A stretch of 64,000 nucleotides of DNA, from assembly GCF_031769215.1 (NCBI RefSeq), contig NW_026782299.1:1798001-1862000 (forward strand). Reading direction: 5' to 3'. Below are positions 1-49,492 of the stretch, piece by piece (position 1 is the first letter of the stretch; every line of letters begins with the position of its first letter). Below the pieces are notes generated by a model. It saw only the letters and a program-made list of their open reading frames with translations. It was not told where the DNA came from and made no database searches. Both the position numbers and the translations under genes were made by a program. The stretch comes from Ylistrum balloti. Taxonomy: Eukaryota.

Positions 1-1251
1 GGAGAAACACAGCCAACCAACAAAATTGAAAGTTTCAATACTAGAATTTGTCTTTTCTTCTTTTCTCTTACAAACATGATGCCATACCTGATCCAATAAG
101 TCTAATGTGAATAAAGATACTTCAAACAATTATTAATAACTGACTTTTTTATAAGTTAATAAAGATTTGTTGTGCCTGCCACAACCTCATGAAATATCAC
201 ATGATTTCTGATTTGAAGAAGGCAAAACTCAAATGTTGGATATCTTCATATTGCATTTTAAAAGTTTAGAATAAAGTTACAAATATTGCCTTAGACATAC
301 TAATGCAACATTAACTCACTCCTGTCTAAATTTCTGCACAGCATCTGCTGAGAAGACAGCTCTAATGATAACCTCTCTGTCTGCAACGTCTCGCACCACA
401 CTGCCATCACCCAGTATCTCTATATCCTGCAAGAACAATCAATAATTATTTTGTGCTCAACTTCACATTTTCAATGACTACATTACAATTAAGTGTATAT
501 GGATAATAATCAGTTGTCGACTGACGCTTCGTTGTATATCTACATCAATAACCCCAACCAGAAAACTGCAGCAATCAAACCGATACCTTTTCACTTTATA
601 AAATACTCATAGACATATACATGTTTGTGTGCTTCAATCATAAAGTAATCATCTTGACCAGGTCTACCATTGATCATAACATGATACCAGTAAATAGATA
701 TGACCAAATAGGGGTATTTACTTACAATACAAAAGCAGTAAATTTTGAAAATAATTTGAATTCTTTTAAATATGCAAGTTATTCCTGGCATCACATCATT
801 TGGTTTTAGAATATGTCATCAAATACATACTTTATATGTTGTTTTTTTGAGTCCGGTGAAGAGTATTTGTCTAATCCTGGACAGGAAATCAATTTAACTT
901 GAAGTAGTTTTTTTCGTGTGTCGAGTCTGTTTTCTTTATTTTGGGAGCTTTTTTCGAATTCATATTTGCATTTAGCTCAAATAAATACTTTCTCAATCAC
1001 GAACGGAAACATTTTGGCATGTGTGCAAGATCTGGGTGAATATGAGAAAGACTTTGGCATTTAGTGGTACCGTTCGGACCCTTTCTAATCCCTTACCACC
1101 TTGTAACTAAAGTCGTGAGTATCGGGACACGTACTCTAATTACGTCAATGGTTTGACTTTTCTGTTTTCGTGTTGGACTGCAAATACAATTGACAATCCA
1201 TGGGTGTTGTTTTAAAGAACAGTTATGTGAACCAAATTTCGATCGAGACAT
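1..1251 (-). CDS. ACD: TPP1/ACD-like shelterin OB-fold protein, 5' part (runs off the window start)
   Basis: Exons 1251-1135 (ATG; MSRSKFGSHNCSLKQHPWIVNCICSPTRKQKSQTIDVIR, donor GTACGT, phase 0), 426-320 (acceptor TTGCAG; DIEILGDGSVVRDVADREVIIRAVFSADAVQKFRQ, donor GTGAGT, phase 2), 87-<1 (acceptor ATCAG; E-YGIMFVREKEEKTNSSIETFNFVGWLCFS, open to the edge). Motifs PWI, Q-x-I-D-V-I-R-D and V-A-D-x-x-x-I-R-A-V-F-S-x-D-A-V match recalled human TPP1 (LRPWI...GQLLEVLQD...LVSDGTHSVRCLVTREAL). Position head-to-head with Par-6 supports the call. Exon 3 is the least certain. Confidence 0.7.
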
Positions 1252-1471
1252 CTTGAATCCATCACAACTCTTTTTGGATCTTTCCCGCCATCTTGTGCAA
1301 ATAATACTCTTCAACAAATGTTTCGGGTTAAATGCATAATATTTCGAACGTATTTTCTTTTTCAGCAAGTCATCTATCTCTAATGAAAAATATTTTTAAC
1401 GAACCTTTAATTATTTGATTAGCCAGAGTTATATATATATTTCGAAATAGCAATGTTTCAAGGATAGTTCA

Positions 1472-1500
1472 CCAATAGGTTCTGACGTCACCGGAAAGCG
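1472..1500. promoter_or_regulatory. Core of a bidirectional promoter: CCAAT box, CRE and ETS-like site
   Basis: CCAAT 1472-1476, TGACGTCA 1483-1490 and CCGGAAAG 1491-1498 lie in the 323 nt between the divergent ATGs at 1251 (-) and 1575 (+). Confidence 0.55.
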
Positions 1501-1574
1501 CTTACTCAAACATAAAAAAATATTGTTGTTGGAATCTGCTTCAGAAATTGCCCTTTTGGGGCTTAAACTTCACT

Positions 1575-4500
1575 ATGTCGAGGACTGCACGGATGCCACA
1601 TAGGCAGCAGAACGGAATGGTGGAAGTGAAAAGCAAGGTATGACAGAACAATGCATATGAACTTAGTTGAATATACAGGTAACTCCGTTAAAGCTACACA
1701 AGGTGTGTCGTTGAGACCCACTTCCTGGGATCTATTTTTAGCTCACTTCCATTTGTTTACATTACTGATTAAACCATCAATTTACAATAAGTATTAATTG
1801 AAAACCATATTGTTTATATGATTGAATCGTTTCTTTTCTCACACAATTAGTAAGGCATATGGAGCAATTGTAATATAATGAATATCTGCTTCTGCGAAGT
1901 CGGCTCTAATGGCAATTTGTCGATAAAATCACAACCGATCGTCTGTGACATTAGATTTTCTATGTTAATTTGTTACTTGTTTAATCATTCTTTATTTGAA
2001 CGCTGAATATGAGGTTTAGATTGTTCCCAATTAAGGTATTTTTTTCGGTTTGTTCCACATGAGTACCCACAAAGTGCAAGCTAAGTATGTATATTCAGGA
2101 TCACACCTGTTACATTTTCGGTCAATCACCACAGCAAACTGTCAGGTTAACTGCTTGTCACGTAAGCCTTTACTGCTAAATTCCAATACATGAGTCATGA
2201 TGTAGGCGAATATATTTTGTATTCTAGAGTCAAGATCACTATATCTTAATTATCTTATAGTTAAAAAGTATATCGGAAAGCCCACCCTTGAATCTGATGT
2301 ATCAACCATTGGGTTTATTGTAAGACAACTGTACCTGTATATTAGTAATCAACATTTAACCAATAAGGAATGTTTAAGGAAATGAATTGAAGTTTATATG
2401 AAAAATTATTAATTCTGAATCTCTTTCCCAATGCAAAATGTTATCTTTTTCCTAAAATGTTGTTCACTTTTCTCGCAATACTATAGTGACTGGTGATTTG
2501 AAGGCATATCATTTGAGATGAAACTGTTGCCATTTTGCTACACTCAATTTCTCGCGTTTGAAATATTCTGAGAGTATCTTCAACAAATCAATCATATTGT
2601 AACTTTGATTCTTCTAGTTTGATGCAGAGTTCCGAAGGTTTGCGATTGACAATTCCAAGAAGTGTGAGTTTACCCAATTTGAGGCAACCCTTGGTAAAAT
2701 CCACAGCCTTCAGGACATTCCCTTTGTTGTAACGTACACTGACAGCAATGGAGATCTTCTTCCAATCAACAATGATGACAACTTTTACAGGGCTGTGACT
2801 ATGGCCAAACCCCTTCTGCGAGTCATGATTCAGCGCAAAGGTAAACATTTCTTCTTCATTATAGCAGTCACAGAGGGAAGCTATTTTGTAAGTCATGGTT
2901 TAGGTGAAGGAGGTGAATGCATGTTTACTGCATCAGATATGAAAATTTTCAGGAAACATTAGTTCATAGATAAGAGAGATTAAGCAATCATATGTGTGCG
3001 AGTGGGCTTCAGGTACATGTATATGTTAGCTTTATTTGTTAAATAATACATGTATGCTATGCACCAGTTGGCTATTGTCATATTATCTTGACAAACAAAA
3101 TGACTATTTTTATACAATTTATGTCCACAGTAATTATAGTATATTAGACAAGCCTCCCTGTCCCCTTTAAATTAAAGTTACAGTATACTATACAAGCCCA
3201 TCACTGATATAGGTACCTGTATTTGTTTACAGCTTTAAGCATCTGATTTTAACACTCAATTTCTCTTTATGGTCATATTGAACTAGGAAAAACATAATTT
3301 TGTATATATATTATGTTGGGAAATATAGGTGCGAAAATACATCATTTACAGAAAATTTTATTGAGAAAATTAATCACACAAATACACTTGTCTTCAAGTT
3401 TGTACTTACTAGTAATCTCATGCCATATATGTGTAGCAGATGCATTACAACATAAATCAATGTCATATGCACAAAATTCTTCAGATTCCCCTTCAGGTGC
3501 TGTTATGTACACATAAACTTAAGGTTGTTTAACCTCACTATTATTGATTATGACTTGGAGTATTTTCTTTCCGAAAAAGTCTGAGCAAGTGTGATAGTCA
3601 GCCATTTACCCTGGTTAGTAGAGCTGTTATCATATCAGCATCATGATATATTGTCTGATTGAAGAAGGAAGACAACAATATTTTAGAAAATTATAGGTTT
3701 GTGATTTCACCACCCACAAAAATAAAAAAGAAGCAGTTTTATTTTGAGGTAAAATCATGTATATTTCAGATAAATTAAGCACAAGGGCTGAATAAAAATA
3801 CCTGTAAATTGATTCCTATCAATGACAACTCGCTGTCAAAATATTTGGTATATTTGAATTATTTCAGACACAAATTTTTATCATAATTCAGAATTGACAG
3901 GGGTCGGTATAGGGAAGCTTTAAATATTATAATCAAAAGAATGCCATTCCATAAATTGCTCTTTTAATTTGTTCAATTTTATGAGGTGATTTGTTTTGAG
4001 AAGGATTAGTTTGGGGAAAGTTCAACGCATTGCATCTCTGTAAAAGTTGAACTGTAGCTCAATTTCTGATACCTGGTACAGTAGGTCTAAAAAAAACAGG
4101 AGTTTAAGTATCTATTGCATACCTAATATCATACTGCAAGTGCAGATTTTCACTTTTGCAAACTTACATATTTTCTTAATGTTATTTTGCTTTGCAGGAG
4201 AAAGTTATGGTGAAGCCAATGGTTATGGAACATTAGGTGTGAAACGGCGCAATCCAATCAGCAAGCTGATGAGTGCTGAGGCTCCCCCCAAGCCTCGTAT
4301 CAATATCAGCATGCCTGAAGACTTCCGAAGGGTGTCTGCAATCATTGATGTTGATGTTGTTCCAGAAACTCATCGGCGTGTCAAGCTTATGAAGAATGGC
4401 TCAGACAAGCCTCTGGGATTTTATATCCGTGACGGCACAAGTATGCGTGTTACACCTCATGGACTAGAGAAAGTGCCTGGCATATTTATATCAAGACTTG

Positions 4501-4934
4501 TGCCTGGTGGGCTGGCAGAAAGTACAGGTCTTTTGGCTGTGAACGATGAGGTGCTGGAAGTAAATGGTATTGAGGTTGCGGGGAAGACCCTTGACCAAGT
4601 TACAGACATGATGGTGGCTAATAGCTCCAACCTCATCATCACAGTTAAGCCAGTCAACCAGCGCATGACCCTTGCACCAATGCGCGGGTCATCAGTCCGT
4701 ACCTCTCAAATGTCCATGAATTCGCAAAAGTCACAAAGTTCGCACCATTCCTCCAAGTCATTTGACAGTGACATTCCATTGATCCATGAGCAAGAGGATG
4801 AAGATGATGAGGTTGAAGATCATCTGAATCACCAAAGTGACCATTTTGGCAGAGAAAGTGACCACAACCTCAGTCATCACAGCAATGCCAGCCTTGATAC
4901 AGAGAGTAAAGATAGCGCTGTTGTCACCTTATAG
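1575..4934 (+). CDS. PARD6: Partitioning defective 6 (Par-6) polarity protein, 340 aa
   Basis: Exons 1575-1637, 2618-2840, 4198-4934; GT-AG introns in phases 0 and 1; total 1023 nt. PB1 domain ([14 protein letters not shown]...[17 protein letters not shown]), semi-CRIB ([17 protein letters not shown]), PDZ ([10 protein letters not shown]...[30 protein letters not shown]) and C-terminal VVTL PDZ-binding motif. Confidence 0.97.
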
Positions 4935-7900
4935 GACAATGTTTGATAATGCAAATTGTATCTGATCATATACAAAATGTTTTATATGTAAAATTAGCTT
5001 TGTACTCAGCAATGTAATTAATCTGCAGTGTCTTGGTTTAATCATGTTGTAGTTAGATTTTACTGCTCTCTTAGGCTTTTTAAGTTCATTTGACATTGTG
5101 GCACTACAAGACCTATTTTTAGTCCCAATTTCGGTAAAAGAAGTCTTCTTTTGATTCTTTTAGAACTATGATCTGTTTTAAGTAATATGCGATGTGTATA
5201 CAAACATGTAGGCATTTTAATTAACTGTAAAGAATGCAACGCAATTTCTCTGGCACAGTAGATTTACTGTAGCAGCTTTCTTTGAGGAATTGGTCATGTG
5301 GACCGCTTCCCCACCTAATTTTACAATTATGTAGATATTCTATTCGCCTGGAGGTGTGGGGTACATTTGATAGCACATATTGTCTTGTCATGACTAAAGA
5401 TAAGGGAAACACATATTTTATTGTATAACACGTTTTACTGGAAAAGGTGATGTTTTTGAAAATTGTTTGCTTTTTCTGCGATAGGTGCTGTGGTTAGAGA
5501 ATTTGTTATAAGCACTTGTGTCAGACCATAATACTATGGTGGATATTTGTGGAATATAAATTAAGAAGTTTTTTTCAGGATTAAAAAAAACAGAAGTAAT
5601 ATTTTGGCAATGGCTTCTATTAGTGACGTAATGTTATTTGTGCCCAAATTCTGCCTAGGAGTATATATTAAGAGCATTATGTATACGTTTACAGGTGACA
5701 TATTTTAATTTATGCCAGCATGTATGTTTTATACCAATCATGTAAATAATTATTAGCAGTGGCCATGCAAGGCTCTGGAAATCTGGCATGATTTGACAGA
5801 CACAAACATCTGATAATTTTAATTTCTGAGTGAAAATTAGGTTAAATTTTAAATTTATCTGGATTTGCCAATCACAGTTTCTGACACTCAGATCAGGTAC
5901 AAAAGAATATTGAAGTCTTGAAATATTGTAATTAAAATTTGGTGATGAAACATCTGACATATTAAAATTGCTAGTTGCGGTAGTTATCCACATTAGCCTT
6001 GAATTAGCATTTGATTTACAGATAGAAGAATATCAGAGCAATCAATTTGGCCATAAAAGCAAACATGGTATTCCAGTTTCTTATGTGTCTTTCCCTGGAT
6101 AGTGTACTCGAGATGGTGGAGAATTATCATCTTCTAGTTGTCTATCTGGAACCATTCAGTCTTTGATTGAGTGAAAAGATTTTATTAAAAAATAATAGAG
6201 ATCTAGTATTGCTATAATAAATTATGGAAACTTCAAATATTAATTGTAACATATCTTTTTGATGAGAATAGAGGGTAAGTCATACAATTTAATGTGAAAT
6301 GTTATATATAGAATTAATGTTTTATCAATAGGTGGCCTCTTAAGTTAAGTGGAGTTATTCCCCTTGAAAATTCACACTGACCTCTTACCACTGTGACAAA
6401 TCATTTGTGTGATGCGTAAATCACTAATGAAATTGCTTAATTATATTTACATATTCATATCCAATATACACAACTATGTATTCATTGTAAAAAAACTATA
6501 CACTTTCTAGCTAACATTATTCCGTTCTCTATACATTCCTGGTGGTATTGTACACTGTTTTTTTTTTCCATTTTCACATTGATTTTAATAGTTTCATAGA
6601 TTTGGATATTGTTGGACAGTCCTTTCCTTGACAAAAATAAATGTGTCCAAAATTTTGTTCAGATATGCTTGCTGTGGTGGTTGCAATTTTCTCATAAATT
6701 GTAACTTGATTTTGCCCAGTTTCTACCTTCAGCTTAGATACATGCAAAGGGGCACAATTGGATCTGTGAATGAAGTAGGGATGAAGTTACAGTATACATA
6801 CAACGTTGTGAAAGTTTCGCTTTATAAGTTAATATGTATTATACATGTATTATTATTTTAATAAGTTGTGTCATGGAATGAAAGAGCTGAAATGATTATA
6901 ACAACAGATAAGGTATATCGTGATGTTGTGTTTTTTTACATATCTGTAACATAGTATGGTAGATGCAGAAAATACCTTAAGAGATCATTATGGCTTTAGG
7001 AGAGCCATTCTGCTCTGATGATGCACATGCTTGGATTTAGCATATTGTGTTTGCAACCATAGATCTTTACCTTAGGAAAGTAATCAACAGTTGAGACAAG
7101 AGAGACGGGCCACTTCAAAAATATTTCAGTCTACAGCCACTGTTTTATTAATTATCAGCATTATCTTTTGTTTTATATGTTAATTGATTTTAATGTAGGA
7201 CTTAGATTATATCAATTGTATTCCTGTTGTTCTTCCTCTTTAAGAGGTTTTCTTTATTAATTTATTCTATCTTCCTGATTTAAGATAATTGAAAAATTCA
7301 GTTTGTAAGGGGTATTTCTCCCTTCTAATCCCCAATTCTAAGTATGGTACTACATGTAGATTATTATAGTATATTGTAGATTATTTCTCCATTTTCCATG
7401 GAAAATATTTACATGTTGACTCAGATTGGTACATTTCCTTAAAATTATAATAAGCATCATATTGCATCTGACTCAAAATCACAGGATTTGCTAATTACAG
7501 ACCATTGAAATAATACTTGTTTGTTTAAAGTCACCTAACTGCAGTAAATATGAATGGGTATATTACCAGGCATGGACTTACTTTTGGAAAATAGTAGATT
7601 ATAGATTGTTGAGTACATGTAACTTTATGATGCCACTTGTACACAATCTACTTCTAAATGCTGCAAACACTGAGTGATATCTTAAAAAGAGTGTGTACAA
7701 AGAGTTCATTTGATACTCAATGTAAATCTAGAATAAACTGTATAATTTTAGGTATGACAAACTATGCAAGTGCACATGGAAAACATACAAAATTTGTATT
7801 TATTTTACTATGGCAAAATGATGTATTTTACAAAGAAGACTGATTTAATTGAATACAGGGTAATGCTTGGTTGATATTGGTCAGTTTATATAATCTTTAT

Positions 7901-10654
7901 CAAATATGGTAACTTGTTTTGATTAGGACATTGCATTCTTTCATTCATTGGATTATGACAACTACTACTGTGTTCTCCAATGACAAGACAATGTACATAT
8001 AGTTTTAAGTAATGTTATTCAGTGTAAGGAAGGCAGGATACTTTTGGATTGCATCGCAGAAATTCTTTGGCATGTAAACAATTTCATTACTTAAAGAATC
8101 ATAACACTCTTTTAGTCAACGTTGAAATAAAGTGAGAGGAAAGCTGGACTTTGTAACGCTTGAACGATATGAAGTTATCTAACAGGACTTAATATTATTG
8201 CAGTTATGAAGTTCTTATTTTTATACAGATTTTTAAAGAGATGAACGTATGTGCTGGAATATTCATGTACCGTGCATTTTGGATTTTATTGTTATGAAAT
8301 AAGGGCATCGACTGTTTTTATGTGACTAATTTATAGGTTGTGATTTTATATATATGTAAATATGTCCATGCGATAAAGGACTTGGGAGCACCACCTCCCG
8401 GTAAACTAATTGTACACTTGTATATATATATATACATTCTGTGGAAATATAGTTAATTGCAGCATACACCTTGAAAGAAGTTTTTATTTACTTGGTAAAT
8501 TTGACATTCGTGGATAGTTAGTGGTCCTCAGCTATTACATATAGGGCTTGTTCATACATCTTTGTCTATAGTGATGGTAGATGATATCCAAAATTGAGGA
8601 TTTTTTTTATCAACATTTATCAGGGTGCCTAAAATCTTGTGTGTTCATCAAAATACCTATGTATACATACTATTAAATCCCATGATAAAGACCTTGTTTG
8701 AAGCTATCTGGTACAGGTAATGTGATTAAAAGATTGCTATTTAATTTTTGCTTCAATCACAGAATGTAAGGTATACAATTTTGTATATCTGTCAGTTAAT
8801 AGTATTTAAGAATGTCATAAAAAAAATCAAGCAGTCCTTTCGGATTGAATGTTCTGTGGTGTTTTTATCAGTTCTTTGTACATTTTCATGTCTAAAAATA
8901 GCATCAATAATCGGTACAAATTGTCAGTTTTTCTTTCATTTTTTTTTTAATCATAATAGATCTTTACTGTACATAGAATGGACCATTACCAATACATATA
9001 CATTTACATGTATATACATTTTATATATATACATCAAGGAATCATTTCATTTCTTTACATATTAAATGTACTTAAATCATTCAAATTAAAGTAAGAAATT
9101 CAGATGAATATTAGAATTAATATATGTACATTAAATCAGTTATCCATACTAATTGTTGAATCTTTAAATGTTTCTCTGTTAGTTTCTCAAGTAAATTTTT
9201 TTTGCTCTATCAATTTGAGATTGAGTTGGAAATCTGGCAGAAGTAGAAATGATGTTTTGCAACTAAGAGCTAATGCTGATATTATGATGTATTAAAAGTG
9301 ATGTTGCTATAGTATATGTTGTTTGGTCAAGTAACTTCATCTGCTTGCTTATTTTTGGTGTTCTCAAGTACAAAATGCTTCTTACAATGATTTGAAGATT
9401 TAGGTTTTTTAGCAGAAACTGCAGCTGTCTTTCCTAGATACACGCCTTTTAAGTTGGTCCCTTCTGTTTGTCTAAGTGATGTAAATACTCTCAGACATAC
9501 AGACAGAAACCTACACAGCTATGTTCATCTACACAACAGCTTACTTTATAACCATAATGGTTGTGTTTGTTCCATGATGAATACGAAAAAGAGTTTTGTT
9601 TTGTAGTCAATATTATCAGACTACATACAATTGAAATTGAATTTGTCGCAATGTAAATATTGTCTAACAGAGGTTACAGATTTACACCTCTGTATAGATG
9701 TGTGTACTCATACCGTCAATACAGACAAAGCATCTTTGAATTCAGCCATTTGTGCCTTTAATATTGTCCTGCCACTAAGCACCTTGACAATTATTCACTT
9801 TTATTTGTGGAATTTGTCAACATGATCTATTTTTCTACAGAAACGTTTTTATTTTGCTAATTGCAATCACGTCTTTGCTTCATAATGTCTGCCATTTATT
9901 TATGTTGGTCTTGCCATATTGAAAATGGTGTTGTAATTTTGAAAACAATGTTGAAAAAAAAGAAAAAAAAGAAAAAAAACAATCTTCTCACTATCCCTCT
10001 TTATATTTTTCAATGTTTGATTATAGGCACAAGTCTAATTTTGATGTCAAGTATGAAGAGAACAAGAGAACAGATTTAAGGCTTTACCCTTTATGTAATG
10101 AACAATGAAAAAAGTCTTGTTTTGGGAACAGTGTTTCATTTGGTAAGGTCAGATCAACTTTTATGATCTATCATTTATTATTGATGTTATAAAAAGTTTT
10201 TACAGTGATATATAATTATATATGCAATAAAACTAATATACTAAAACTCTCTTGGTTTTGTTTTTAATCTGTATTTATCTGGAAAGTAGTCTGCATTTAT
10301 CTGGAAAATTGAAAAGTTTTCTGAAAAGGGGAATAGTTTGGATAAATACCTAATTTTCACATAAATGATTCTGCATTTTAATCATTATTATAATGATTCA
10401 AAGGAAAGCAATTTACTTTGAAGCTTTATTAAAGTTGATGAACTTTTATAGTGTATAGCATCTTCTGTACAAAAGAATCTGTATTATCATCTGATAAAAG
10501 TTTTGATTCCAAGGATTTTGTATACCAGGTGGATAAACCATATTTAGAAATCAATAGACATGATGATGATATAGCCTGCTAGATAAATAGATTACTACTT
10601 GAAACCTGATGTGGGATCATGAGGACAATTCTTGGATATTAATCAGTTATTATG

Positions 10655-11360
10655 TTAGCCGAGACTTTGTCTCAGGGTGACCTATTGCGATCCCTTTTTG
10701 TGCAGCGTCATGTGCAATAAACTTTCATTATTTTTTACTTCTTCTGGAAAACTAAACTGATTTCAATGAAATCTTACAAAAACCTTCCATGTCTAAAGGC
10801 ACACCAAAAGTGTAAATTGTATTGTCCTGAACCCCAGAAGCTTGAGGGGTGGAGCCAAAAAGGGTCAAAATGATTGAAACTTGAAAAATCTTCTCAAATC
10901 CCAGGTATGGTAGAATCAAATACTCTCCATGGATAGAAAGGCCTTCAGATGCCCTGCCAAAATAAAAATTTCAGGACCCCATGGTCTCACATTTCCCCCA
11001 TGACAGTTTATATTTGAAAATTATATTTTTGAACATTATTTGTTTATTTTCTATTGGAAATGTTCAAACCTGTATAGGATTATAAGCATAAGCTGACTGT
11101 TTGATGAGATGCACGTATTGACCTTGACTAACCCCCAGGGGCTGTTGGGCAGGGCAAAAAATTGGTCAAATTGACTGAAATTTCAAAAATTCAGAAGCTT
11201 TAGCATAGGGCAGCAGTTAAGGTATACACAATTTACATTTGCTTTATGTGTACACTATAATTAAAAAGTTATGTTACGTTTCTTAAAATGATCAATGCAA
11301 TGTCATGTTACAAGAAGCATTGTGATTCAGGTGACTGTTAAGGCCCTTGAGCCTTTTGTT
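10655..11360. mobile_element. Non-autonomous Helentron/HINE (DINE-1-like) element
   Basis: Starts TTAGCCGAGAC after a T-rich tract and ends CAGGTGACTGTTAAGGCCCTTGAGCCTTTTGTT (terminal hairpin-like GGCCC..GAGCC). Contains internal duplicated GGGG..AAAA..GGTCAAA blocks. Resembles recalled bivalve HINE ends. Confidence 0.55.
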
Positions 11361-19237: not shown

Positions 19238-22022
19238 GAGGTAGAAGAGACTGCCACAGGCAAGGTGTTTATGTTGATCAGGTTTCAATCTTCTCGGCGC
19301 CAGGAGTTTGTCAATTCAATGAAAAATTACAGTTCTGGGCTTGAAAAGTTCCAAGGGTATCTGTCTGCATTACAGCACAAGGCAAGTAACATTAAAGTGT
19401 CTACATGTTATCCTTTTGTTTTTGAAATGCCGAGACCATATCTATTTACATACATCATCGTGCTACGTCCACCAAGCGTTGTTATGTTTTTAGGTTTGCC
19501 CAAAATCCAATGTGGCCATCATCTTGAAAAATAGATATTAAACAACGTCTGTTCAACTTAGTAATTTGCGGGAATGTTCAGTCAACAAAGTCCAATATCG
19601 CCGCCATGACTGTCATCTTAACACATTTTGAAATTTTGAAACGTCTTTTTGATTTCACTAGCGGCATTGAGCTGAAATTTGTGAGAATGTCATAAAATTA
19701 AAATGAGGAGTGATTTAGCCTTTACTTCTTCATGCTATTTGAGTATTTGAGTGAAGATCTTCAAGTTAAACGAGTTGTGTTTAGATAAATGCAAATTCAG
19801 TTTCATTGTTGGCATTGTGAGTAAAATTTAAAACTTGCCATAAGACTTATGCTGTATATTCAGAAATGTCATGTTCTACTTAAGATCACGACCGTGACCA
19901 GAGGTACATGGAACAAGGCCAGTCTTCTGGCCATCCTCACATTTGAGTGTGCAGACATGGCTCGAGATTGGCTCAAAACTACTCCGGAAATATGTATGGA
20001 GAAGTGGCTGGGAGGTTGCGACATTCTGTTAGTTGAATCATCAGAACCGTTTCAGCAAGGTAAATAATGCATTGTGTCTAACCAATAATAACATCATACA
20101 GTGGTCTATATTCACTCCGTCATATCAAATACCGTCTTGTTAAAAAACTGACCCATCTAATAAGATTATTAGATATCTATACAAACTATATAGAAGAAGG
20201 AATGCCATGTTATCAAATTCTGAATATCTGATTTCTATCACCACTTGTTATGTTACTGAGAACTTAATATGTTAAATGTTGTTTTATGTTCTGCCCAGAT
20301 CACCAAGTTCTTTCTATGTCCAACATTGGCATAACTGTAGAGGACACAAACGAAAACTTGGCACGATATCGGTACCTGCTTAACGAATACCTGAAACCAT
20401 CAAGGTAAAATTATTTTGTTTGTGAAATCAACATAAAACAAGTAAAAACGAAAACAAGACGACCAACCAGATCTTGACCAAGTGTTGTTGAAAGTAAAAG
20501 ACGAACTCAATTATCCTGATAAATATTACTAAAGGTCCTCAACCTATTCAGATATTCCAATTTAAAATTCATAATAACTTTTTAAAGTTTAAATTCATTA
20601 ATCACATATTTATCACATAATTCAATACATTGGGGGCCAAGATAGCTGAGTCAGTAGTATATTCTTTAATTCGTAATTTCAGGGTGCGGATTGGCGGGGT
20701 ATCAGTTGCCTCCTCTAAGGTAAACCATTGCCTGCGTGGAAAGTGGGAAATGGATATTGAGAAAACTATCGTAATTCTGTCTTGGCCGACCATGGATGTC
20801 CTTAGAAAGTATAGGGGCAGTGTGGATCCTGGTAAGTATTCACTTATCCCTATGATAAAACACAGGCTCAAAATGCCATGTTCTCATGTAGAAGTAAAAA
20901 ACAAGACAAAATCTTTTAAAAATCAGCTCTAATCTTGAACACATATATGAGATAAAGGTGCAGTCAATAGTCCAAAATATCAATGACACACATACTCTCA
21001 TTCGTCGTGAGATTTGGGATGATTTAGATTTGAAATATATGCAGAAAAAAAAATCAGATTGGCAATACCAGGTATTAGCCTGCATGTCCATCTTTATAAA
21101 TTCGTGGTATCTATATTTTTTTAAATACTGTAGACTAGAGGGATCTTCCTCATATTTCATGAGAACGTTCTTTTGTTCCATGGTGGCGACAGCTCAAATT
21201 TGATACTGATCAGAAAAAAAAAAATGGCTGACATGTGGCCATCTTGTATTTTACAACGAAAGTTTTTGTTGCTATTTGTTGAGACATTTTGGATGAATCG
21301 GTTTCAAATTTCTTATGTTTATATGGTAACAATTAGTGCCTGCTCAACTCTGAGACTGACAAGAAAAATAAAAATGGCTGAAGGTCGGATGGTCCTCGTT
21401 GATTATGACAATTAGAGTTTAACAACACTATTTTTTAAGAACTATAGTATAAATCTTTTGTGAATTCATATGAAAATTCGAGTTGGTGCCCTTTAAAATC
21501 TGTTTAATTTGTATTTACGTAAACCTGTATCTACATACTTTTCTGTGTACTTTTACCTCCATAGTAAGCAAAATTAATTTTGGGGCAATCAACTTTTGTT
21601 TTCAACATGTTTTCTATCATTTGCAGTTTTTCACTAGCTTATATTGATATGTATTTCCTAATAATACTACAAAGGTATGATGTTCCTGTAGTGTTTCTGT
21701 CATGATCAATAAGAAGAAAAACCCTTATTTTCCAGAAAGACAAATGTGTATGTACATGTAAAACCAAACACTTCTGGTTCAAACAGAGAGATTTTTTCAT
21801 GTAATAACTCTGATAATTTTAATTTTTTTAATTTTTAATTTTATGAAATAGAATGGTAATCAATTATTTTTACACATTAACTTTGTAGAAATCTACCAGG
21901 AAAGTTTAGAGCTGAGAAACAAGGTATTTGAAATTGTGTTGACTGCAGTTGTACAACTTGGTCCGCTACCCAGTCTAGCCAACAGTGAGGAGGAAGATGG
22001 TGGGGAGGTTCAAGCTTCATAA
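19238..22022 (+). CDS. Tandem DUF1330-like (dimeric alpha+beta barrel) coding exons; probably exons 8-12 of the arrestin gene
   Basis: Exons 19238-19381, 19885-20059, 20299-20404, 20683-20831, 21889-22022 (TAA); phases 0,1,2,1; the first intron is GC-AG. Domain 2 (RYRYLL..YLKPSRVRIGGVSVASSKVNHCLRGKWE..KTIVILSWPTMDVLRKY..S.D.EIYQESLELR) fits the recalled DUF1330 pattern GG..A....LEG.W....V..FPS.E.A......EYQ....R. Domain 1 (RGTWNKASLLAILTFECADMARDW) is a more diverged copy. An in-frame ATG at 19229 would allow a separate gene. Confidence 0.75.
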
Positions 22023-22915
22023 ACCGTATCTAAATTCGGCTATAATGTGTATTCACATAAATCTAAAACAATCTCTCTCAATCCAAAGCATTTTTTCTCA
22101 ACCAAAACATTCTACAAGATATTAAGATAAGCCTTATCTTTGATTTATGGTTTAAGTGTATATTGCATTATATGGTATGTAAATCGCTTTTCTATATAAA
22201 TGATATTTGCTTTTGATGGCTAAAAGTATGTGACAAATTACCTGGGTATATCTAAATTTCATGAAAAGTTGTTCAACAAAACATGACTCTACGATATTAC
22301 ATGAAAGGCAGTTAAATATTTTAGTTCTGTTTTAGAAATATCTAGATGCCACATTCATAAGGAAAAAAGTTGTTGATAGACTAAAGGTATTATGATAACA
22401 AATCATGAAGAAAATCACATGAAGGATTGGAATTTCTGTTAGAAACAGTTCTCATCCTCTCCAACAGAAATTAATTATGTTTGTACTTAAACTGTGACAA
22501 AGTACCTTGTAGGGTTTGTGGGATTACTAGGGGCGTTTAGTGAAAAATATTGAATGGAATTGAAGAAAAACGCCAATTGATAATGGCTGGGAAGGATTCT
22601 GTTTGTAAGTATTAAAAGTTTTTGCCGATTACTTGGTATTGTTTATTTGAAACATATAAAGTTTTGCTCTTATAGAATTTATTGTTTTTAATTGTTATGG
22701 TTTTTATTGTTGTTAAAATCGTGCCATGGTTTTTTCTGTATGACAATATTATTCATCTGCAGCAATACCTTCCACTAAGTGTAGAAGAGATGGTGCTGCA
22801 ATATCAACAAAGACCATTTGCTACCTCCTTAGTAAGGATATATTTTCCCTAGTAGGTTTTACGTTATCAGCGGTCACTGTAAAGTCATTAATTTTCAAGA
22901 GTGTTTTTTTGGGAG

Positions 22916-42349: not shown

Positions 42350-45300
42350 TCACAATTCCTCGTGAAGATGAATCTTTGGTTTTTCCACCACATCTCTATC
42401 GTTTTCCTCTTCGTCTCCCTCGTCTGCGCTGACAATTGATGGCATTTTCCTCACGTACTCCTTCTTTGGTTTGATGTCCTGGACATGGACAAATTCAGAC
42501 TGGTATTTATTTTTCTTAAAAACAGCCTTACCGAGTTCATCCACCAACTGGTTGAGAATGTTCTTCCTTTTGGTGAAGTATTCCACAGTTTTCGGAAAGG
42601 TCACCTCTGTAAAGAAATAAATACTCACAGTTCATTTTTCAAGTTACACGATTGTAGATACAGGTCTAAAACATCGATTATTGCTTTATTTTTTGTTTTT
42701 TCGATTTTGTATATTTTATTTAATGGTGACATTCGGGTAAATAAGACTAACCGTCAGTATATGCAAGGGCCTTCAGAACTGCCATTCGTTCCTCGTCTAG
42801 CGTGTCCACTTTTCCGTGGTGTTCTACAAACTCCAGCAGATAGATATAATAATCAGCAAATCTAAAACAGACAGATATTATTGAACTGAAGCCGAATCAT
42901 GTTTTATTTTTTTTCAATACAGAACAAGTACATTTTGTCATCGTTGAACCAACACCAAGTTGTATTTCAACATGAAATACATAAGATGCTTCATGACTTT
43001 ATTCAAATTGTTCAAAGATGCAAATAACTGTAAAGAAAATTTCATTAACGTTTGAATATAATCAATTAAAAGATAAAATCGACAGAATATCATGTCGTGC
43101 TAAATCGGTCCCTTCGGCACCTTCCGTGTAAGAAACGACGCACGTCACATTTACGGAAAGTGACGAAGGTTCTCGATCCTTACAACGGAAACCAAATATG
43201 CTCTTATCTTGATAGGTTTAAATGATATTTTTAACACGTTTTTTTTCTTCAAATATTTCAAACCATTTCTGTCGATAAGATTAACCCACGTTTGATACAG
43301 AAATGCCGATATCCAAACCACCGTCGTTTATGTAGTCCGGAGGGGACATTTTGAGATAGTAGCATGTCAAGAGCCGATCAGCTATTTATAGATTGTCAAC
43401 GAATGCATCATTTATCTAGTGTTTTACCAAACATTTACTTTTTCATTACACGCACATTGATATTTGATTGACAGGACCATAAAGGTACTGACAAGTATTT
43501 AAACTGAAAAGTCATTCATTTGAAATTGAGCTTCATTTGTCATTTACTGCATACACGAGATGCAAAATGCACTGAAATATTTAAAATTGTAAGGTAAGAA
43601 TGCCGATATGATATATGTGACAACTGAGCAAGAAAACTAGAAGACAACTGGAAATTAGTCTAAACCTTCCCGCTTCAAATTCTCAGTCACAATCAACATC
43701 AATTTCAGGTTAATATTACATCAACATCGACTCATGTTTGTACCTTTCGCATAGATGATGATGTTCATCAATTCCATCGTGAGATATTCGCTGCGTGAAA
43801 GTGCAAAATTCATAGGAATCTTAAATATTAGACAAGAATGTCCGTTCTATGTACTATGGTACATCGCGCTTCGTCGCTGCTATATTGAATGTCCCCTCCG
43901 GACCAGGTAAACGGCAGTGGAAATCGTTACATCGAATTTCTTAGTAACATATAGGGTGGTTATTGTACGATATACTTACTCATTCATTTCGTATTTCTTG
44001 GCGATATCTTTAGCTGCTACCAGTAGTTCACTCTATAGAAGATAATTTCAGTATCAGTTATCGTTGTGGGCAATTTAACTATTTGGATAAGGAACAATAT
44101 ATAGCCAAACATCTACTACGTAAACAAATCAATTATCATTCCTTGTTTTGTAAATAACGAGGATATGAAAAAAATATCGTGAATGAAGTGAGAATTGAAT
44201 AATTTGATATTTCTCGAGCGTTTCAAAGTTAGTCTTTACATAAAACACAATTTCCATATTTAGATTTCAACGGAAAATACGCATTCGCTAGGCATGTGAC
44301 GTCATTATTAAGGATAAAGATTAAATATTTTAAATCAAATTGCCATAACAGTTTTTTTTGTGAAATACACAATCAATACTAGGTACAGCATGCGGCAAAA
44401 GCAAAAAATTTCGTGCATATTGATATATACTTGATATTTGATACAGGTCATATTATTCAGAAATGTGTTCCATTGTGAATATTTTTTTCAATAATGATTA
44501 ACACGAGGTGCCAGTCCCCTCCCCCTTCCAAAGCCCTTGCGTGCCGAGATTACCATCTGAGTGGCTTTCCTGATGACCTCGATGTTATCTGCGATGAGGT
44601 TATCGAAGTCAGAAATACGTCCTGCCTGAAAATATTCCATGTTATAAATGTTGACAAAAATGTTTCAGCAAGAGATTGTTTAAACGTTTTTTTATAAACG
44701 ATCATCATAAAAATTGAAAATTAAAAATTTCAGTTAATCTTCTCATGATGCCTGATATTTATTTTTGTAGTACGTAATTCTTTCGGAAACCGTTACCTTG
44801 GAAGGAAGTGAACCATCCTTGGAACGGGACACGCCCGTACGGTCTTCCACAAAGCCCATAAACTCCAGTTTCCGCATGGATCCTCCGTAACGCTTCTTCA
44901 CTTGCTTATCACCATTTTCTATCCAGAACAACGATGGGAAAGCCACAGTCACGAACCTAAAATTTGCAGCATACAATATTTGTTGATATAAGGACTTCAA
45001 AGTGGACGACTTTGTGGCTCTTAATATTGTTATATCAACCACTTCACTATCATCGTTCTGACACGAAAACTTTGGTTATATTGTGAACATTGTCTCTATA
45101 AACGCTTGACTGAAGAAAAACATATATTTTCAATTAGATAAAAATTTCAACGTCCCACATAGATCGTTGTTGAAGTATGAAAAACATGGTATACATACTG
45201 TTTACGAAGCTCGGGCTCTGTTCGTACGTCAAAATGGAGAAACGACACCTGGTGGTGACAAAGTGAATTATATTTGATAAACATATCCCATGATGATGAG

Positions 45301-48300
45301 TATGCGAATTATTGTTTTTATGGACATATACTATCAAACGAAATCAAGTTACTGATAAAACATCGCCTGGCGGTGTCAAAGGGAAGTACACCGCCTGGCG
45401 GTGTCAAAGGGAACTACACCGCCTGGCGGTGTCAAAGGGAAGTACACCGCCTGGCGGTGTCAAAGGGAACTACACCGCCTGGCGGTGTCAAAGGGAAGTA
45501 CACTGCCTGGCGGTGTCAAAGGGAAGTACATCGCCTGGCGGTGTCAACGGAAACTACATTGGTATAAACATCCTCATCTGGTGAAAAATGGAGCTATAAA
45601 TTCAATGGTAAGAGAGGAGGATAATATTTTACAACTGAGTGACTTTCGTGGTTGGTGAGTAATGTTCGTTAATTGACTGATCCTATTTTGCCCCTTCAGC
45701 TCATTCTTTTCTGAATAAAGAACTAAATCATTGTTTGCCTCCTCTCACCTCATCATCATTCCTGAAGATCCGAGCTAGTTCTTTGAATTTTTCAAAAGTG
45801 TCGTCATTTGCTGAGAAAAAAAAACACAGAAAATATTCAAGTCTGTTAGTGTGTTTACAGATAAAGACGGAATAAAAAGCTAACACTTTTATTATGTAGT
45901 AAACAACGATACTCCATATAAAATGATAATATAAAAAAGATGCATCTCTACCCGGGTTGTCGCTCCTGAAGTTTGTATTGCAATCTTGAATTTCTGCAAA
46001 TACTGTGATCTGATTGGTCAAAATTAGTGAAAATATTTCACAACAAAAATTCAATAATTTTCGTATTTAACAATTTAAAATGTTTCTTGACCAGTTCATT
46101 AAATGGATCACATTTTATACACCACTTACTGTTGTCATATAGGAGAATCATAGCCTTCAGTCCCCAAGTGGAGATGATTTCGTGATAGTTGTACGAGTCC
46201 AGGCGTGTCGAGTACTCCTTGATGACATCTTCAGAATCTGTGCCCAATTTATTGGAAATAAGATTCACAATGGTATCCACTGTGATATCGCCTTCAAACC
46301 TGTCAACATATCACCCACAAATACCTCTAGTCTGTAATGTTTCGTACAATCAATGGTTCTGACGCAATGACGTCACACAACTGACTTTTTTTCAGATTAA
46401 GGGTAGAAATTGATGTCGACATGTAAAATGTTATTGCATATGTCTGAAATTGTTTGAAAAAAAGGAAACGATAGTAGCAGGTTATACCAAGGAATATATA
46501 TACATATCTATATCGAAGTCCGTGGTGATACATAACTTAGACATGAATTATACGTCATCATATTTGCACTTTCTCTAAGAACGATCCAATCACAGCTTCT
46601 TATCTATACAGTGTACTTACTTTGTGAACTGTTGTTTCCCCGCCTCAAAGTACCCGATGGTAGGGAAGACATCAACATTATATTTCAAGGCTAGAGCCTT
46701 ACTACGCATGCGCCCAAATATCACATCCTGTTCGTACGACTGGGAGGCTGACCAAAACTTGGGAAAGACTAGGCCACAGGGTGTGCACTCTAAAAAACGT
46801 GGAATATTTCACACTGTGTACAATATCATTTTTTTTGGCTTACATGGTGTTTACTTACAAATGTACTGATCAACTAAGCTTATATCTCTAGCAGAAATAG
46901 TATTACACATCACACACACCCTCACACACATAGCCTAATCGGGAACCCTCGGCACTTTCCGCAAGCGAGAAAATGTTCTCGCTTACGGAAAATGCCGATG
47001 GTTCCCGATTGACACATAGCCTAGTCTGTAGGTGACGTTGCCTTCATTGTGACGTCATTACTTGATTCTACAGTAGGAATGTCGGTATCGTTATCGTCTA
47101 TGGTAGGTATAGAAATTAAATTGTCATTCGATATTGTCTTCCATTTCTATATTTCCATTCCCATTCCTGAGAGGTGGAAAAGAATTTTGATATATAAGAT
47201 GCTTTAATCAGTCTGCGGACAAGTTTCCAAAAGTGTCTTGAGTTCGTGTTGCTAAGTAGTCAAGTCTCAAGACTGAGTCAAACCAAATTCTACTAATTAC
47301 ATGTACAAGTGTCCGGGCCCAGTGAGCTCCAGTGACTGCTAGAACGTTTCAGTCTTTGGCTATATAGTGGAAGGCAGTTTGACCGATGTGCGCTACCGTG
47401 ACGTAGTTATACGTCATCAAGTTTTCCCGTTGAGCCGTAATAGTCATCTTAACATTGATTTGCAGCAGGACAACTCACGACCTCATGCTGCATTGGGACA
47501 TATCTACAATAGCAGAAGTCACCGTGCTACCTTAGCATGTTGTGTCTCAGGGTTTTATCTCTAGTGGAGAAAGTTTGGGATGAAATAGGACGACGTCTAC
47601 GTCAGGAGTCAAACCTGTAACGTTGGGCGTGTGACGTATTACATTGTCAGGTATATGACAGATTACTCCCAAGTATTTCACTGTCGATCAGTTCCGTGCG
47701 TAGAAGATGTGTGGCATGGTGAACGTACATAATATTGAACTTGTGAAACCGAATTTGCATACCCTACTTTTATGAGTCTATACATTTTAATCCAAATGTA
47801 CAGAATGTCTGATTCACTTACGAAGACAATGCATTGTAAGTAAAGATTTGGTACAAAATGTAACTTATTATTTTGTGTTCGAGTTAATGGATTACACAGT
47901 ATAAATACATATTGTCTATTAGTATACCTAATCTAGATAAGATTCGTATAACCCTTTTTACCAATTATTCACAACATATTTTACCGATATGAAACTATGC
48001 GGGAAAAACATATATGATAGCAGTGCAAAACTGTTGTTCCTCCCATAATGTACAATGTGGGTGTTGGAAATCCATCATTGTGATACTTACTTGATTTTGT
48101 GACTAACACCAACAAAAACTTCTTTTTATCCAATAACTGAAAACAAAAGATAAATAACTTAAAGAACTTACATCGTAAGGTATAAACCATACAAAATTAA
48201 CTGTATAAATGTTCGTAATACCTCGGCAAATTTCGTTTAAACTCGTAACCGAGTCTGCACGGAATTTCCCGAGATGACTTGATTGTGAATCAATCTATAT

Positions 48301-49492
48301 TATTTTGTATTGTTTACTTAACATTTTGATATTTTAGGAATACGATGAAGTCGGTGTAAATTGTTTTGCTTGCTACACACATGTACACAATACAATACTA
48401 CAGAGACAGTTGACAACAGCTGGGGCAGGCTTCAGTGTAAGACGTGTGAGTTAATTTTGGTCGATTTTACGCATCTGTCACCATCGCTACATCTTTTCTT
48501 ACTCACGAATTTTACTCTAATTCTAACTTCGTTACTCTGTGTAATGTTATAATTCATGTAAACCCGTTTAAAATCAGAGGTCTCCATTAACACCAAATCA
48601 TTAATTGCACAATGCTGCAAATATAAATGACAAATTCTTAATAAAAATACAGTTGTTTACATACCGAAAGGTTCCTAGATTTTACTATAATACATGTGTA
48701 TGTCTCTCGATAAACTTTATAAAGCTCACAATAAGGACAACTTCATTTTTATCTCTTCACATTAATTATGAATAATGATTAAATTACTAGTAATCAAACA
48801 AGATAAAAAGTTTGTACCATGTGATATCACACGGGAAACTGAAGACAGACAGGTGTATTTTGATAAGTTTTTGTCATGTAGTCTGTTTCAATCCCTCAAC
48901 CCTATCACGAATTCATCAACCATATCGAATCCATCAACCCTATATCGAATTCATCAACCCTATATCGAACCCATCAACCCTATATCGAATTCATCAACCC
49001 TATATCGAACCCATCAACCCTATATCGAATCCATCAACCCTATCTCGAATCCATCAACCCTATATCGAATCCATCAACCCTATCTCGAATCCATCAGCCC
49101 TATATCGAATCCATCAACCCTATATCGAACCCATCAACCCTATATCGAATCCATCAACCCTATATCGAATCCATCCACTTTTGATCATAGACTTTTTAGC
49201 TGGTAGACGTATTCCTTGTGTCACGTAAGCATGTAAATTGACTATTTCTATGAAACTCTTGTAAATCTTCAAACTAAAGGGTAAAGTTTTATAGTGTAAT
49301 CCATGCGTGAAAATATGAATAAATAAAATATCGTAACCAAAGACCCAAGTCCAATGAAATGAAACATTTACTGAATATAGACCAACTTACCGAGTGTATA
49401 TTTTTCTCCGTGATATTGAGAACATGTCCAGAAACCACACTAAGGAAACACACGAGTAGTAAACTGGTCAGTGTTATCTTGACCGGCTTCAT
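42350..49492 (-). CDS. ER protein disulfide isomerase-family protein: signal peptide, Trx(CTPC), Trx-like without CxxC, ERp29 C-terminal (D) domain, HEEL; 416 aa
   Basis: Exons 49492-49391, 48136-48091, 46789-46621, 46299-46130, 45810-45749, 45248-45199, 44956-44797, 44625-44554, 44032-43980, 42861-42752, 42606-42350; all GT-AG with consistent phases; total 1251 nt. Signal peptide MKPVKITLTSLLLVCFLSVVSG; KCTPC...YNVDVFPTIGYF (cis-Pro loop)...FEGD; second Trx ...AFPSLFWIENG...YGGS; RTGVSRSKDGSLPSKAGRISDFD linker; FADYYIYLL...EER...KRKNILNQL D-domain pattern; C-terminal HEEL retention signal. Confidence 0.88.
45362..45552. repeat. 28-bp minisatellite with an internal hairpin, about 7 copies
   Basis: Unit CACCGCCTGGCGGTGTCAAAGGGAAGTA; ACCGC-CTG-GCGGT is self-complementary. 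Confidence 0.9.
46937..47010. mobile_element. 74-bp palindromic miniature element flanked by an 11-bp direct repeat
   Basis: AATCGGGAACCCTCGGCACTTTCCGCAAGCGAGAA-AATG-TTCTCGCTTACGGAAAATGCCGATGGTTCCCGATT forms a 35-bp stem with 3 mismatches. ACACATAGCCT occurs at 46926-46936 and 47012-47022. Confidence 0.7.
47370..47785 (+). pseudogene. Degenerate Tc1 transposase catalytic (DD34E) fragment in PDI intron 2
   Basis: GSLTDVRYRDVVIRHQVFP...LQQDNSRPHAA, then after a frameshift LSLVEKVWDEIGRRLR; matches Tc1 FQQDNARPH...DLSPIEHVWD. Confidence 0.8.
48890..49178. repeat. 20-bp minisatellite, about 14 copies, in PDI intron 1
   Basis: Unit CCATCAACCCTATATCGAAT. Confidence 0.93.

What the first reader, a model, noticed from the sequence alone, without database searches (positions are those of the whole stretch)
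1..1637. Divergent TPP1/ACD telomere gene head-to-head with Par-6, as in human ACD/PARD6A
Seen: three phase-consistent minus-strand exons encode PWI...QTIDVIR|D...VADREVIIRAVFSADAV, and the ATG is only 323 nt from the Par-6 ATG. Established: human ACD (shelterin TPP1) and PARD6A are divergent neighbours at 16q22.1, and TPP1 diverges so fast that invertebrate orthologues are often missed. Inference: this is a spiralian TPP1, and the ACD-PARD6 bidirectional pair dates back to the bilaterian ancestor. The REKEEK stretch after the helix may correspond to the human EEKE TEL-patch loop (speculative).
Basis: partly seen in the sequence, partly recalled or inferred. Interest (0 to 1): 0.75.

Follow-up and report, generated by a model that had tools for sequence, protein, structure and literature searches.

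The report
Scallop TPP1 gene head-to-head with Par-6
The left edge of this scallop window holds the first two exons of the telomere protein TPP1/ACD, starting 323 bases from the polarity gene Par-6 on the other strand. The same back-to-back pair is found in abalone, a brachiopod, amphioxus, an acorn worm and mammals, so it is probably over half a billion years old.

Summary
The window comes from the scallop Ylistrum balloti. Minus-strand exons 1251-1135 and 426-320 are real. They are residues 1-74 of RefSeq XP_060075230.1 (764 aa, named 'uncharacterized'). That protein passes Pfam's TPP1 threshold, and its best matches among solved structures are human TPP1 OB-fold chains.

The gene model and the Mizuhopecten orthologue both skip it, and the true exon 3 starts 397 bases left of the window. 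'REKEEK' is a misread of REKKKRQ.

The Par-6 start codon lies 323 nt away on the plus strand, as claimed. Par-6 look-ups show a TPP1-domain gene as the divergent upstream neighbour in Mizuhopecten, Haliotis, Lingula, Branchiostoma and Ptychodera. In the annelid Owenia a small RF-1 gene sits between the two. The pair is absent in the oyster, nemertean and scorpion loci. Intron positions and phases of the OB-fold exons are shared across these phyla.

So the pair very probably goes back to the bilaterian ancestor. Molluscan TPP1 is already known (Myler et al. 2021; Mizuhopecten 'ACD-like'). I found no paper on the synteny. It is a new member of a known kind, the conserved head-to-head gene pair. 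Another first-stage note (s1-232065) saw the same gene from the neighbouring window.

The parts
1135..1251 (-). TPP1/ACD exon 1: start codon at 1251, 39 codons, holds the N-terminal HPWI (NOB-like) motif, phase-0 donor GTACGT
   Evidence: Identical to P0001 residues 1-39. Equivalent 37-44 codon first exons with (K/S)(P)WI and a phase-0 donor occur in Lingula, Haliotis and Branchiostoma.
427..1134 (-). TPP1 intron 1 (708 nt)
320..426 (-). TPP1 exon 2: 107 nt, encodes OB-fold strands beta2-beta3 and the start of the helix, ends in phase 2 (GA|GTGAGT)
   Evidence: On its own its only Pfam hit is PF10341 (E 0.06). 100% identical to P0001 residues 40-74. Homologous exons ending at the same column and phase occur in five other phyla.
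1..319 (-). First 319 nt of TPP1 intron 2.
1252..1574 (.). 323-nt intergenic region between the two start codons; putative bidirectional promoter, 80% identical to Mizuhopecten
1483..1490 (.). Palindromic CRE TGACGTCA, 85 nt upstream of the Par-6 ATG, flanked by the ETS-like TTCCGG (1491-1496)
   Evidence: Conserved upstream of Par-6 in 9 of 10 animals fetched.
1286..1294 (-). YY1-like box AAGATGGCG, 35 nt upstream of the TPP1 ATG
   Evidence: Same motif at the same distance in Mizuhopecten and Haliotis.
1575..1637 (+). Par-6 exon 1 (21 codons)
2618..2840 (+). Par-6 exon 2 (PB1 domain)
   Evidence: (PB1 E 8e-11)
4198..4934 (+). Par-6 exon 3 (semi-CRIB, PDZ, C-terminal tail, stop)
   Evidence: PDZ E 6e-12; 93% identical to Pecten maximus Par-6

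Best explanation
Window 1-1251 (minus strand) is the 5' end of the Ylistrum balloti orthologue of TPP1/ACD, the shelterin subunit whose N-terminal OB fold binds telomerase and which tethers POT1 to telomeres. Exons 1 and 2 encode the NOB-like PWI motif and the first strands and helix of the OB fold. The other ten or so exons lie left of the window.

The gene is transcribed away from Par-6, and the two start codons are 323 nt apart, so the genes must share or tightly abut their promoters. That interval holds a CRE/ETS block near Par-6 and a YY1-like box near TPP1.

The head-to-head arrangement is inherited from at least the bilaterian ancestor. The most likely reason it has survived is that a break in so short an interval would damage one or both promoters.

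Shown here: the exon structure, TPP1 family membership of the OB fold, Par-6 identity, and the adjacency in seven lineages. Inferred: telomeric function in scallops, promoter sharing, and the reason for retention.
For: - Exons equal RefSeq XP_060075230.1 residues 1-74.
- Pfam PF10341 TPP1 scores 28.0 and 33.6 bits against a cut-off of 26.5; the Mizuhopecten orthologue scores 33 bits.
- phmmer against PDB: the best seven hits are all chains containing human TPP1, covering query 15-153 against OB residues 9-155. PWI matches PWI, and the C-terminal helix pattern QD..(I/V)Q(R/K)K matches.
- The AlphaFold model has OB topology (five strands with a helix between strands 3 and 4). The top Foldseek hits are human TPP1 2I46, then yeast Est3 and Oxytricha TEBP-beta.
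- A divergent Par-6 neighbour carrying PF10341 is present in Mizuhopecten (gap 320 nt), Lingula (733), Haliotis (1180), Branchiostoma (1406) and Ptychodera (336).
- Owenia has OB exons 4.1 kb upstream of Par-6; joined, they score 55 bits against a profile built without Owenia.
- The exon 1/2 boundary is phase 0 and the exon 2/3 boundary phase 2 at the same alignment columns in all of these animals.
- Mouse gene order is ..Acd, Pard6a.. (PMC3709837), and the human genes lie in the same chr16 cluster (PMC7801457).
- Myler et al. 2021 (PMC8653790) state that the TPP1 OB fold is conserved across metazoans.
Against: - No RNA evidence for the junctions or the transcription start sites could be obtained.
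- The POT1-binding and TIN2-binding regions were not detectable by sequence.
- The structure model is only moderate (pLDDT 69). VIA-align Z scores of 6.5-7 tie with generic OB folds such as SSB, PriB and RPA.
- The pair is not seen in Ostrea, Lineus or Centruroides, so it is dispensable.
- The CRE is a Par-6 element that persists where TPP1 has left, which weakens the case for shared regulation.
- The head-to-head orientation in humans rests on my own knowledge, not on a tool result.
Confidence: 0.9

Rival explanations
1. The gene pair is kept together by selection for co-regulation. A true shared bidirectional promoter would couple expression of the telomerase recruiter TPP1 with the polarity protein Par-6, for example in dividing stem or germ cells. 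On this view, retention is not merely because the gap is too short to break.
For: The orientation is conserved in seven lineages even where the gap has grown to 1.2-1.4 kb. Conserved motifs lie in the gap. Conserved microsyntenic pairs are enriched in the 5'-5' orientation and in co-expression (Irimia et al. 2012, PMC3514665).
Against: The pair was lost at least three times without visible replacement. In Owenia another gene has been inserted between the two. The CRE stays with Par-6 when TPP1 is gone. No expression data were available.
Confidence: 0.3
2. The minus-strand gene encodes a generic OB-fold protein that is not a shelterin TPP1, and the adjacency to Par-6 in different phyla is coincidental or involves unrelated OB genes.
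For: Structural Z scores do not separate TPP1 from other OB folds. Pfam scores are only a few bits above the cut-off. The C-terminal partner-binding motifs were not found.
Against: Every significant sequence match is TPP1 and nothing else. The neighbours of Par-6 in four other phyla independently carry PF10341. They share exon boundaries, phases and motifs with the scallop gene. The chance that one given gene sits next to Par-6 is about 1 in 10^4 per genome.
Confidence: 0.03
3. The reader's three-exon reading is right, and 87..1 is a used (alternative) exon that gives a short isoform.
For: It has an AG acceptor at 88-89 and an open frame in the right phase.
Against: It is not in the RefSeq model or in the Mizuhopecten or Pecten proteins. 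The frame stops 9 codons beyond the window edge. There is no peptide or nucleotide conservation in the Mizuhopecten intron. Including it would remove OB strands beta4-beta5.
Confidence: 0.04

Closest known systems
Human ACD/TPP1 (shelterin subunit; OB-fold structures 2I46 and 7TRE chain C)
   Same: N-terminal OB fold alignable over its whole length. PWI motif at the start of the fold. Acidic loop after the helix. C-terminal OB helix. Long disordered linker. Divergent neighbour of a Par-6 gene.
   Different: About 20-25% identity. The loop between the PWI motif and strand 2 is shorter. The protein is 764 aa with a much longer linker that includes a 12-aa tandem repeat. The human TEL-patch residues are not obviously conserved, and no POT1- or TIN2-binding motif was detectable. 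Myler et al. report the same for most invertebrates.
Mizuhopecten yessoensis OWF48206.1 'Adrenocortical dysplasia protein-like' / XP_021357963.1
   Same: 76% identical over the OB fold, same exon structure, and the same 320-nt head-to-head gap to Par-6.
   Different: It lacks the Ylistrum QSQNLSLQVQPS repeat, and the linker is otherwise divergent.
Est3 (budding yeast), Tpz1 (fission yeast), TEBP-beta (Oxytricha)
   Same: Same OB-fold subclass. They appear among the top structural matches. Pfam TEBP_beta gives weak hits on the exon 2 equivalents of Lingula and Haliotis.
   Different: No significant sequence match to the scallop protein. Different domain context and no Par-6 linkage known.
Conserved ancestral microsyntenic pairs with bidirectional promoters, e.g. 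HSPE1-HSPD1 (Irimia et al. 2012, PMC3514665)
   Same: 5'-5' orientation, a gap under 1 kb in several lineages, and conservation across phyla.
   Different: The two products have no known functional link. I could not check whether this pair is in that paper's list, because its supplement is not held.

Membership tests
TPP1/ACD (Pfam PF10341; shelterin subunit) | N-terminal OB fold matching the TPP1 profile above the curated threshold | tested here: met
   28.0 bits (full protein) and 33.6 bits (residues 1-200) against a cut-off of 26.5; orthologue P0003 scores 33 bits. Exon 2 alone has PF10341 as its sole hit, E 0.06.
TPP1/ACD (Pfam PF10341; shelterin subunit) | Direct sequence similarity to experimentally solved TPP1 OB folds | tested here: met
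   The best seven PDB hits are all chains containing human TPP1, E 0.0013-0.055, covering query 15-153.
TPP1/ACD (Pfam PF10341; shelterin subunit) | OB-fold three-dimensional structure closest to TPP1/Est3/TEBP-beta | tested here: inconclusive
   The model has OB topology at pLDDT 69. Foldseek ranks 2I46 first (E 2e-4, TM 0.31-0.34) and Est3 in the top ten. VIA-align Z scores of 6.5-7 tie with SSB, PriB and RPA.
TPP1/ACD (Pfam PF10341; shelterin subunit) | N-terminal NOB motif (PWI) preceding the OB fold | tested here: met
   HPWI at residues 16-19 aligns with human RPWI. KPWI is present in Lingula and Branchiostoma, and SWI in Haliotis.
TPP1/ACD (Pfam PF10341; shelterin subunit) | TEL patch (acidic loop after the helix that contacts the TERT TEN domain) | tested here: inconclusive
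   An acidic stretch, QE|LEDS, aligns with the human DWEEKE region. It is mostly encoded by the true exon 3, outside the window. Myler et al. report that TEL-patch residues are not conserved outside mammals.
TPP1/ACD (Pfam PF10341; shelterin subunit) | Central POT1-binding domain | tested here: inconclusive
   No PDB sequence match for residues 255-400. A block conserved between the two scallops exists there, but it was not tested further.
TPP1/ACD (Pfam PF10341; shelterin subunit) | C-terminal TIN2-binding helix | tested here: inconclusive
   No match for residues 715-764. The C-terminal tail is conserved between scallops. It is reported as not recognisable in most invertebrates.
TPP1/ACD (Pfam PF10341; shelterin subunit) | Telomere localisation and binding of telomerase and POT1 | not testable with these tools
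   Needs experiments.
Conserved bidirectional (head-to-head) gene pair | Divergent orientation with start sites less than 1 kb apart | tested here: met
   323 nt from ATG to ATG. The gaps are 320, 336 and 733 nt in Mizuhopecten, Ptychodera and Lingula.
Conserved bidirectional (head-to-head) gene pair | Same pair and orientation in distant phyla | tested here: met
   Mollusca (three species), Brachiopoda, Cephalochordata and Hemichordata. Annelida has one inserted gene. Mammals by literature and my own knowledge. Absent in Ostrea, Lineus and Centruroides.
Conserved bidirectional (head-to-head) gene pair | Shared promoter activity and co-expression | not testable with these tools
   No RNA run could be laid.
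Par-6 (PB1 - semi-CRIB - PDZ) | PB1 and PDZ domains in order, with orthology to known Par-6 | tested here: met
   PB1 E 8e-11 and PDZ E 6e-12. 92-95% identical to Pecten maximus 'partitioning defective protein 6-like' over all three exons.

The most novel reading that the evidence does not exclude
The TPP1/Par-6 head-to-head pair is a selectively maintained, co-regulated unit that has linked telomerase recruitment and cell-polarity machinery since before the protostome-deuterostome split. It would also serve as a reliable synteny anchor for finding the fast-evolving TPP1 gene in animals where sequence searches fail. No paper I could search mentions this linkage.
Probability: 0.25. Interest if true: 0.7.

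Novelty: new member of a known kind. Interest (0 to 1): 0.45.

Why it matters
TPP1 evolves so fast that a word-based protein search starting from the scallop found only other scallops. RefSeq calls the scallop proteins 'uncharacterized'. Par-6 is easy to find in any animal.

A gene order that has held since the bilaterian ancestor gives a practical way to locate TPP1. It found an Owenia gene of 2064 aa that has no Pfam hit on record. It also adds a clean, short (about 320 nt) ancient bidirectional promoter for study.

If the linkage reflects co-regulation, it would tie telomere maintenance to polarity and asymmetric division. If it does not, it is one more example of passive retention of a very short intergenic interval.

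The TPP1 identification itself is not new. Molluscan TPP1 is covered by Myler et al. 2021, and the Mizuhopecten orthologue was named ACD-like in 2017.

Tried and rejected
- RNA evidence: the only run holding the stretch (X1, kind unknown) laid no contig on window 1-3000, so the splice junctions could not be checked with reads.
- Word search with the scallop OB fold found only three scallop proteins. I therefore went through Par-6 instead.
- Pfam scans of single exon equivalents from other phyla were mostly below detection. A home-made profile was needed.
- VIA-align Z scores do not discriminate TPP1 from other OB folds.
- Sequence searches for the POT1- and TIN2-binding regions gave only chance hits to designed proteins.
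- P0002, P0004 and P0005 from the exon 2 search are repeat proteins with borderline E-values, and I dismissed them.
- Literature: no paper holds PARD6A together with 'microsynteny' or 'bidirectional promoter'. The supplement of Irimia et al. 2012 is not held, so prior listing of the pair cannot be excluded.
- Look-ups for Pomacea Par-6 and for the GenBank Mizuhopecten TPP1 were not on record.
- No human contig was fetched. Human and mouse adjacency is taken from papers and from my own knowledge.
Full report
**What is in the sequence**

On the minus strand an ATG at 1251 opens a 39-codon exon (1251-1135) that ends at a GTACGT donor. After a tgcag acceptor, a 107-nt exon follows (426-320) and ends GA|GTGAGT.

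On the plus strand Par-6 starts at 1575. Its three coding exons are:
- 1575-1637
- 2618-2840, the PB1 domain (E 8e-11)
- 4198-4934, the PDZ domain (E 6e-12)

These are 92-95% identical to Pecten maximus Par-6.

**Identity of the genome and of the gene**

A full-library phmmer search with exon 2 alone returned a 764-aa protein whose residues 40-74 are identical to exon 2. Its residues 1-39 are identical to exon 1. It is RefSeq XP_060075230.1, 'uncharacterized protein LOC132554918' of the scallop Ylistrum balloti.

The fetched locus L001 matches the window base for base. L001 position x corresponds to window position 11252 - x. The gene spans 13,639 bases with about 12 exons, most of them left of the window. 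This agrees with an earlier first-stage note from the neighbouring window (s1-232065).

**The third exon is wrong**

The RefSeq protein and the Mizuhopecten yessoensis orthologue (76% identical over the OB fold) both continue after ..KFRQE with LEDSNSC... That stretch is encoded at L001 11648-11744, which is 397-493 nt beyond the left edge of the window, behind a tgttgcag acceptor.

- It reads ..FVREKKKRQ.., not 'REKEEK'.
- It runs into a stop 9 codons past the window edge.
- It has no peptide or nucleotide counterpart in the Mizuhopecten intron, whereas exons 1-4 are all conserved.

The TEL-patch speculation therefore falls. In the alignment to human TPP1, the position of the human acidic loop is taken by QE|LEDS. 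This straddles the exon 2/3 junction and lies mostly outside the window.

**Is it TPP1?**

- Exon 2 alone has a single Pfam hit, PF10341 TPP1 (E 0.06).
- The full protein scores 28.0 bits, residues 1-200 score 33.6 bits, and the Mizuhopecten orthologue scores 33 bits. The curated cut-off is 26.5.
- Against all PDB sequences, the seven best matches to residues 1-165 are chains containing human TPP1 (7TRE_C and 2I46_A, E about 0.001-0.002). They align over the whole OB fold. HPWI lies on human RPWI, and the C-terminal helix motif is shared.
- An AlphaFold model built on a shallow alignment (pLDDT 69) has the OB topology plus a long C-terminal helix.
- Foldseek ranks human TPP1 first, followed by chain C of the yeast telomerase holoenzyme (which I take to be Est3), solved Est3 structures and TEBP-beta.
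- VIA-align Z scores (6.5-7) only say 'OB fold'.
- The POT1- and TIN2-binding parts could not be recognised by sequence. Myler et al. 2021 report the same for most invertebrate TPP1s, and they describe the OB fold as conserved in all metazoans (PMC8653790).
- The Mizuhopecten GenBank entry was already named 'Adrenocortical dysplasia protein-like'.

**Synteny**

The TPP1 word search reached only scallops, so I anchored on Par-6 and read the neighbours of Par-6 in other genomes. The gap is measured from start codon to start codon.

| Animal | Upstream neighbour of Par-6 | Gap |
|---|---|---|
| Mizuhopecten | divergent PF10341 gene | 320 nt |
| Lingula anatina | divergent PF10341 gene, 1327 aa | 733 nt |
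| Haliotis cracherodii | divergent PF10341 gene, 1576 aa | 1180 nt |
| Branchiostoma lanceolatum | divergent PF10341 gene, 440 aa | 1406 nt |
| Ptychodera flava | divergent PF10341 gene, 589 aa | 336 nt |
| Owenia fusiformis | RF-1 gene, then a 2064-aa gene without Pfam hits | 4.1 kb |
| Ostrea edulis | no TPP1 found | - |
| Lineus longissimus | no TPP1 found | - |
| Centruroides | no TPP1 found | - |

In Owenia, the exons of the 2064-aa gene, joined, score 55 bits against a TPP1 OB profile built without Owenia. TPP1 is therefore still there, 4.1 kb from Par-6 and in the same orientation.

The scorpion locus has extra PDZ genes, and a second contig carrying the same protein was not shown, so that absence is weak.

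For mammals, a mouse paper lists ..Acd, Pard6a.. in chromosomal order (PMC3709837), and the human genes lie in one chr16 cluster (PMC7801457). That they are head-to-head in human is my own knowledge.

**Gene structure supports orthology**

The first exon has 37-44 codons, carries the (K/H/S)(P)WI motif and ends with a phase-0 donor. This holds in scallop, Haliotis, Lingula and Branchiostoma.

The second exon ends at the same alignment column in phase 2 in scallop, Haliotis, Lingula, Ptychodera, Branchiostoma and Owenia.

One particular gene sitting next to Par-6 by chance has odds of roughly 1 in 10^4 per genome. Shared descent from at least the bilaterian ancestor is therefore the only reasonable reading.

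**The intergenic region**

The region is 80% identical between the two scallops. The most conserved block holds a perfect CRE (TGACGTCA, window 1483-1490) next to TTCCGG. An AAGATGGCG (YY1-like) box lies 35 nt upstream of the TPP1 ATG. The YY1-like box recurs at the same distance in Haliotis.

The CRE recurs 60-330 nt upstream of the Par-6 ATG in 9 of the 10 animals fetched. These include Ostrea and Centruroides, where TPP1 is not the neighbour. Twelve of the 17 TGACGTCA sites in 379 kb lie within 1 kb upstream of Par-6. The CRE is thus an old Par-6 promoter element, not evidence for joint regulation.

**Mechanism and rivals**

Most likely (0.9): the gene is the scallop TPP1, and the pair is ancestral. 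Why it was kept is open.
- Passive retention, because a break in so short an interval would damage a promoter. I think this is more likely.
- Selection for co-regulation (about 0.3). No expression data could be obtained.

**Novelty**

The TPP1 call is not new. The deep TPP1/Par-6 linkage was not found in any paper I could search. The supplementary list of conserved pairs in Irimia et al. 2012 was not available. The finding fits the known class of conserved 5'-5' microsyntenic pairs. I rate it a new member of a known kind. It has practical value as a synteny anchor for a fast-evolving telomere gene.

Noticed in passing
window 1483-1490; L002-L009 just upstream of position 10001: A perfect palindromic CRE (TGACGTCA) sits 60-330 nt upstream of the Par-6 start codon in 9 of 10 animals from 7 phyla. 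This includes species where TPP1 is no longer the neighbour. Twelve of the 17 such sites in 379 kb of fetched DNA lie within 1 kb upstream of Par-6. It looks like a very old Par-6 promoter element.
   Followed up: partly
window 1286-1294 (minus strand); L002 and L006 at the same offset: A YY1-like AAGATGGCG box lies 32-35 nt upstream of the TPP1 start codon in both scallops and in the abalone.
   Followed up: partly
L001 about 21786-22118 (left of the window): Ylistrum TPP1 carries a 12-residue tandem repeat (QSQNLSLQVQPS, six to seven copies) in its C-terminal linker. The repeat is absent from the Mizuhopecten orthologue.
   Followed up: no
L005 1-6541 (Owenia fusiformis): A 2064-aa gene with no Pfam hit on record has TPP1 OB-fold exons at 5787-5900, 5185-5301, 4710-4793 and 4182-4253. 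A small intronless RF-1 domain gene (6029-6541) lies between it and Par-6.
   Followed up: partly
P0007 (Pecten maximus isoform X2): This isoform replaces the PWI-containing first exon with a different N-terminus. That suggests an alternative first exon or promoter for TPP1 in scallops.
   Followed up: no
L003 25358-27182 (Ostrea) and window 42350-49492: A thioredoxin/PDI-like gene lies downstream of Par-6 in the oyster. An ankyrin-repeat gene lies convergent downstream of Par-6 in both Owenia and Lineus.
   Followed up: no
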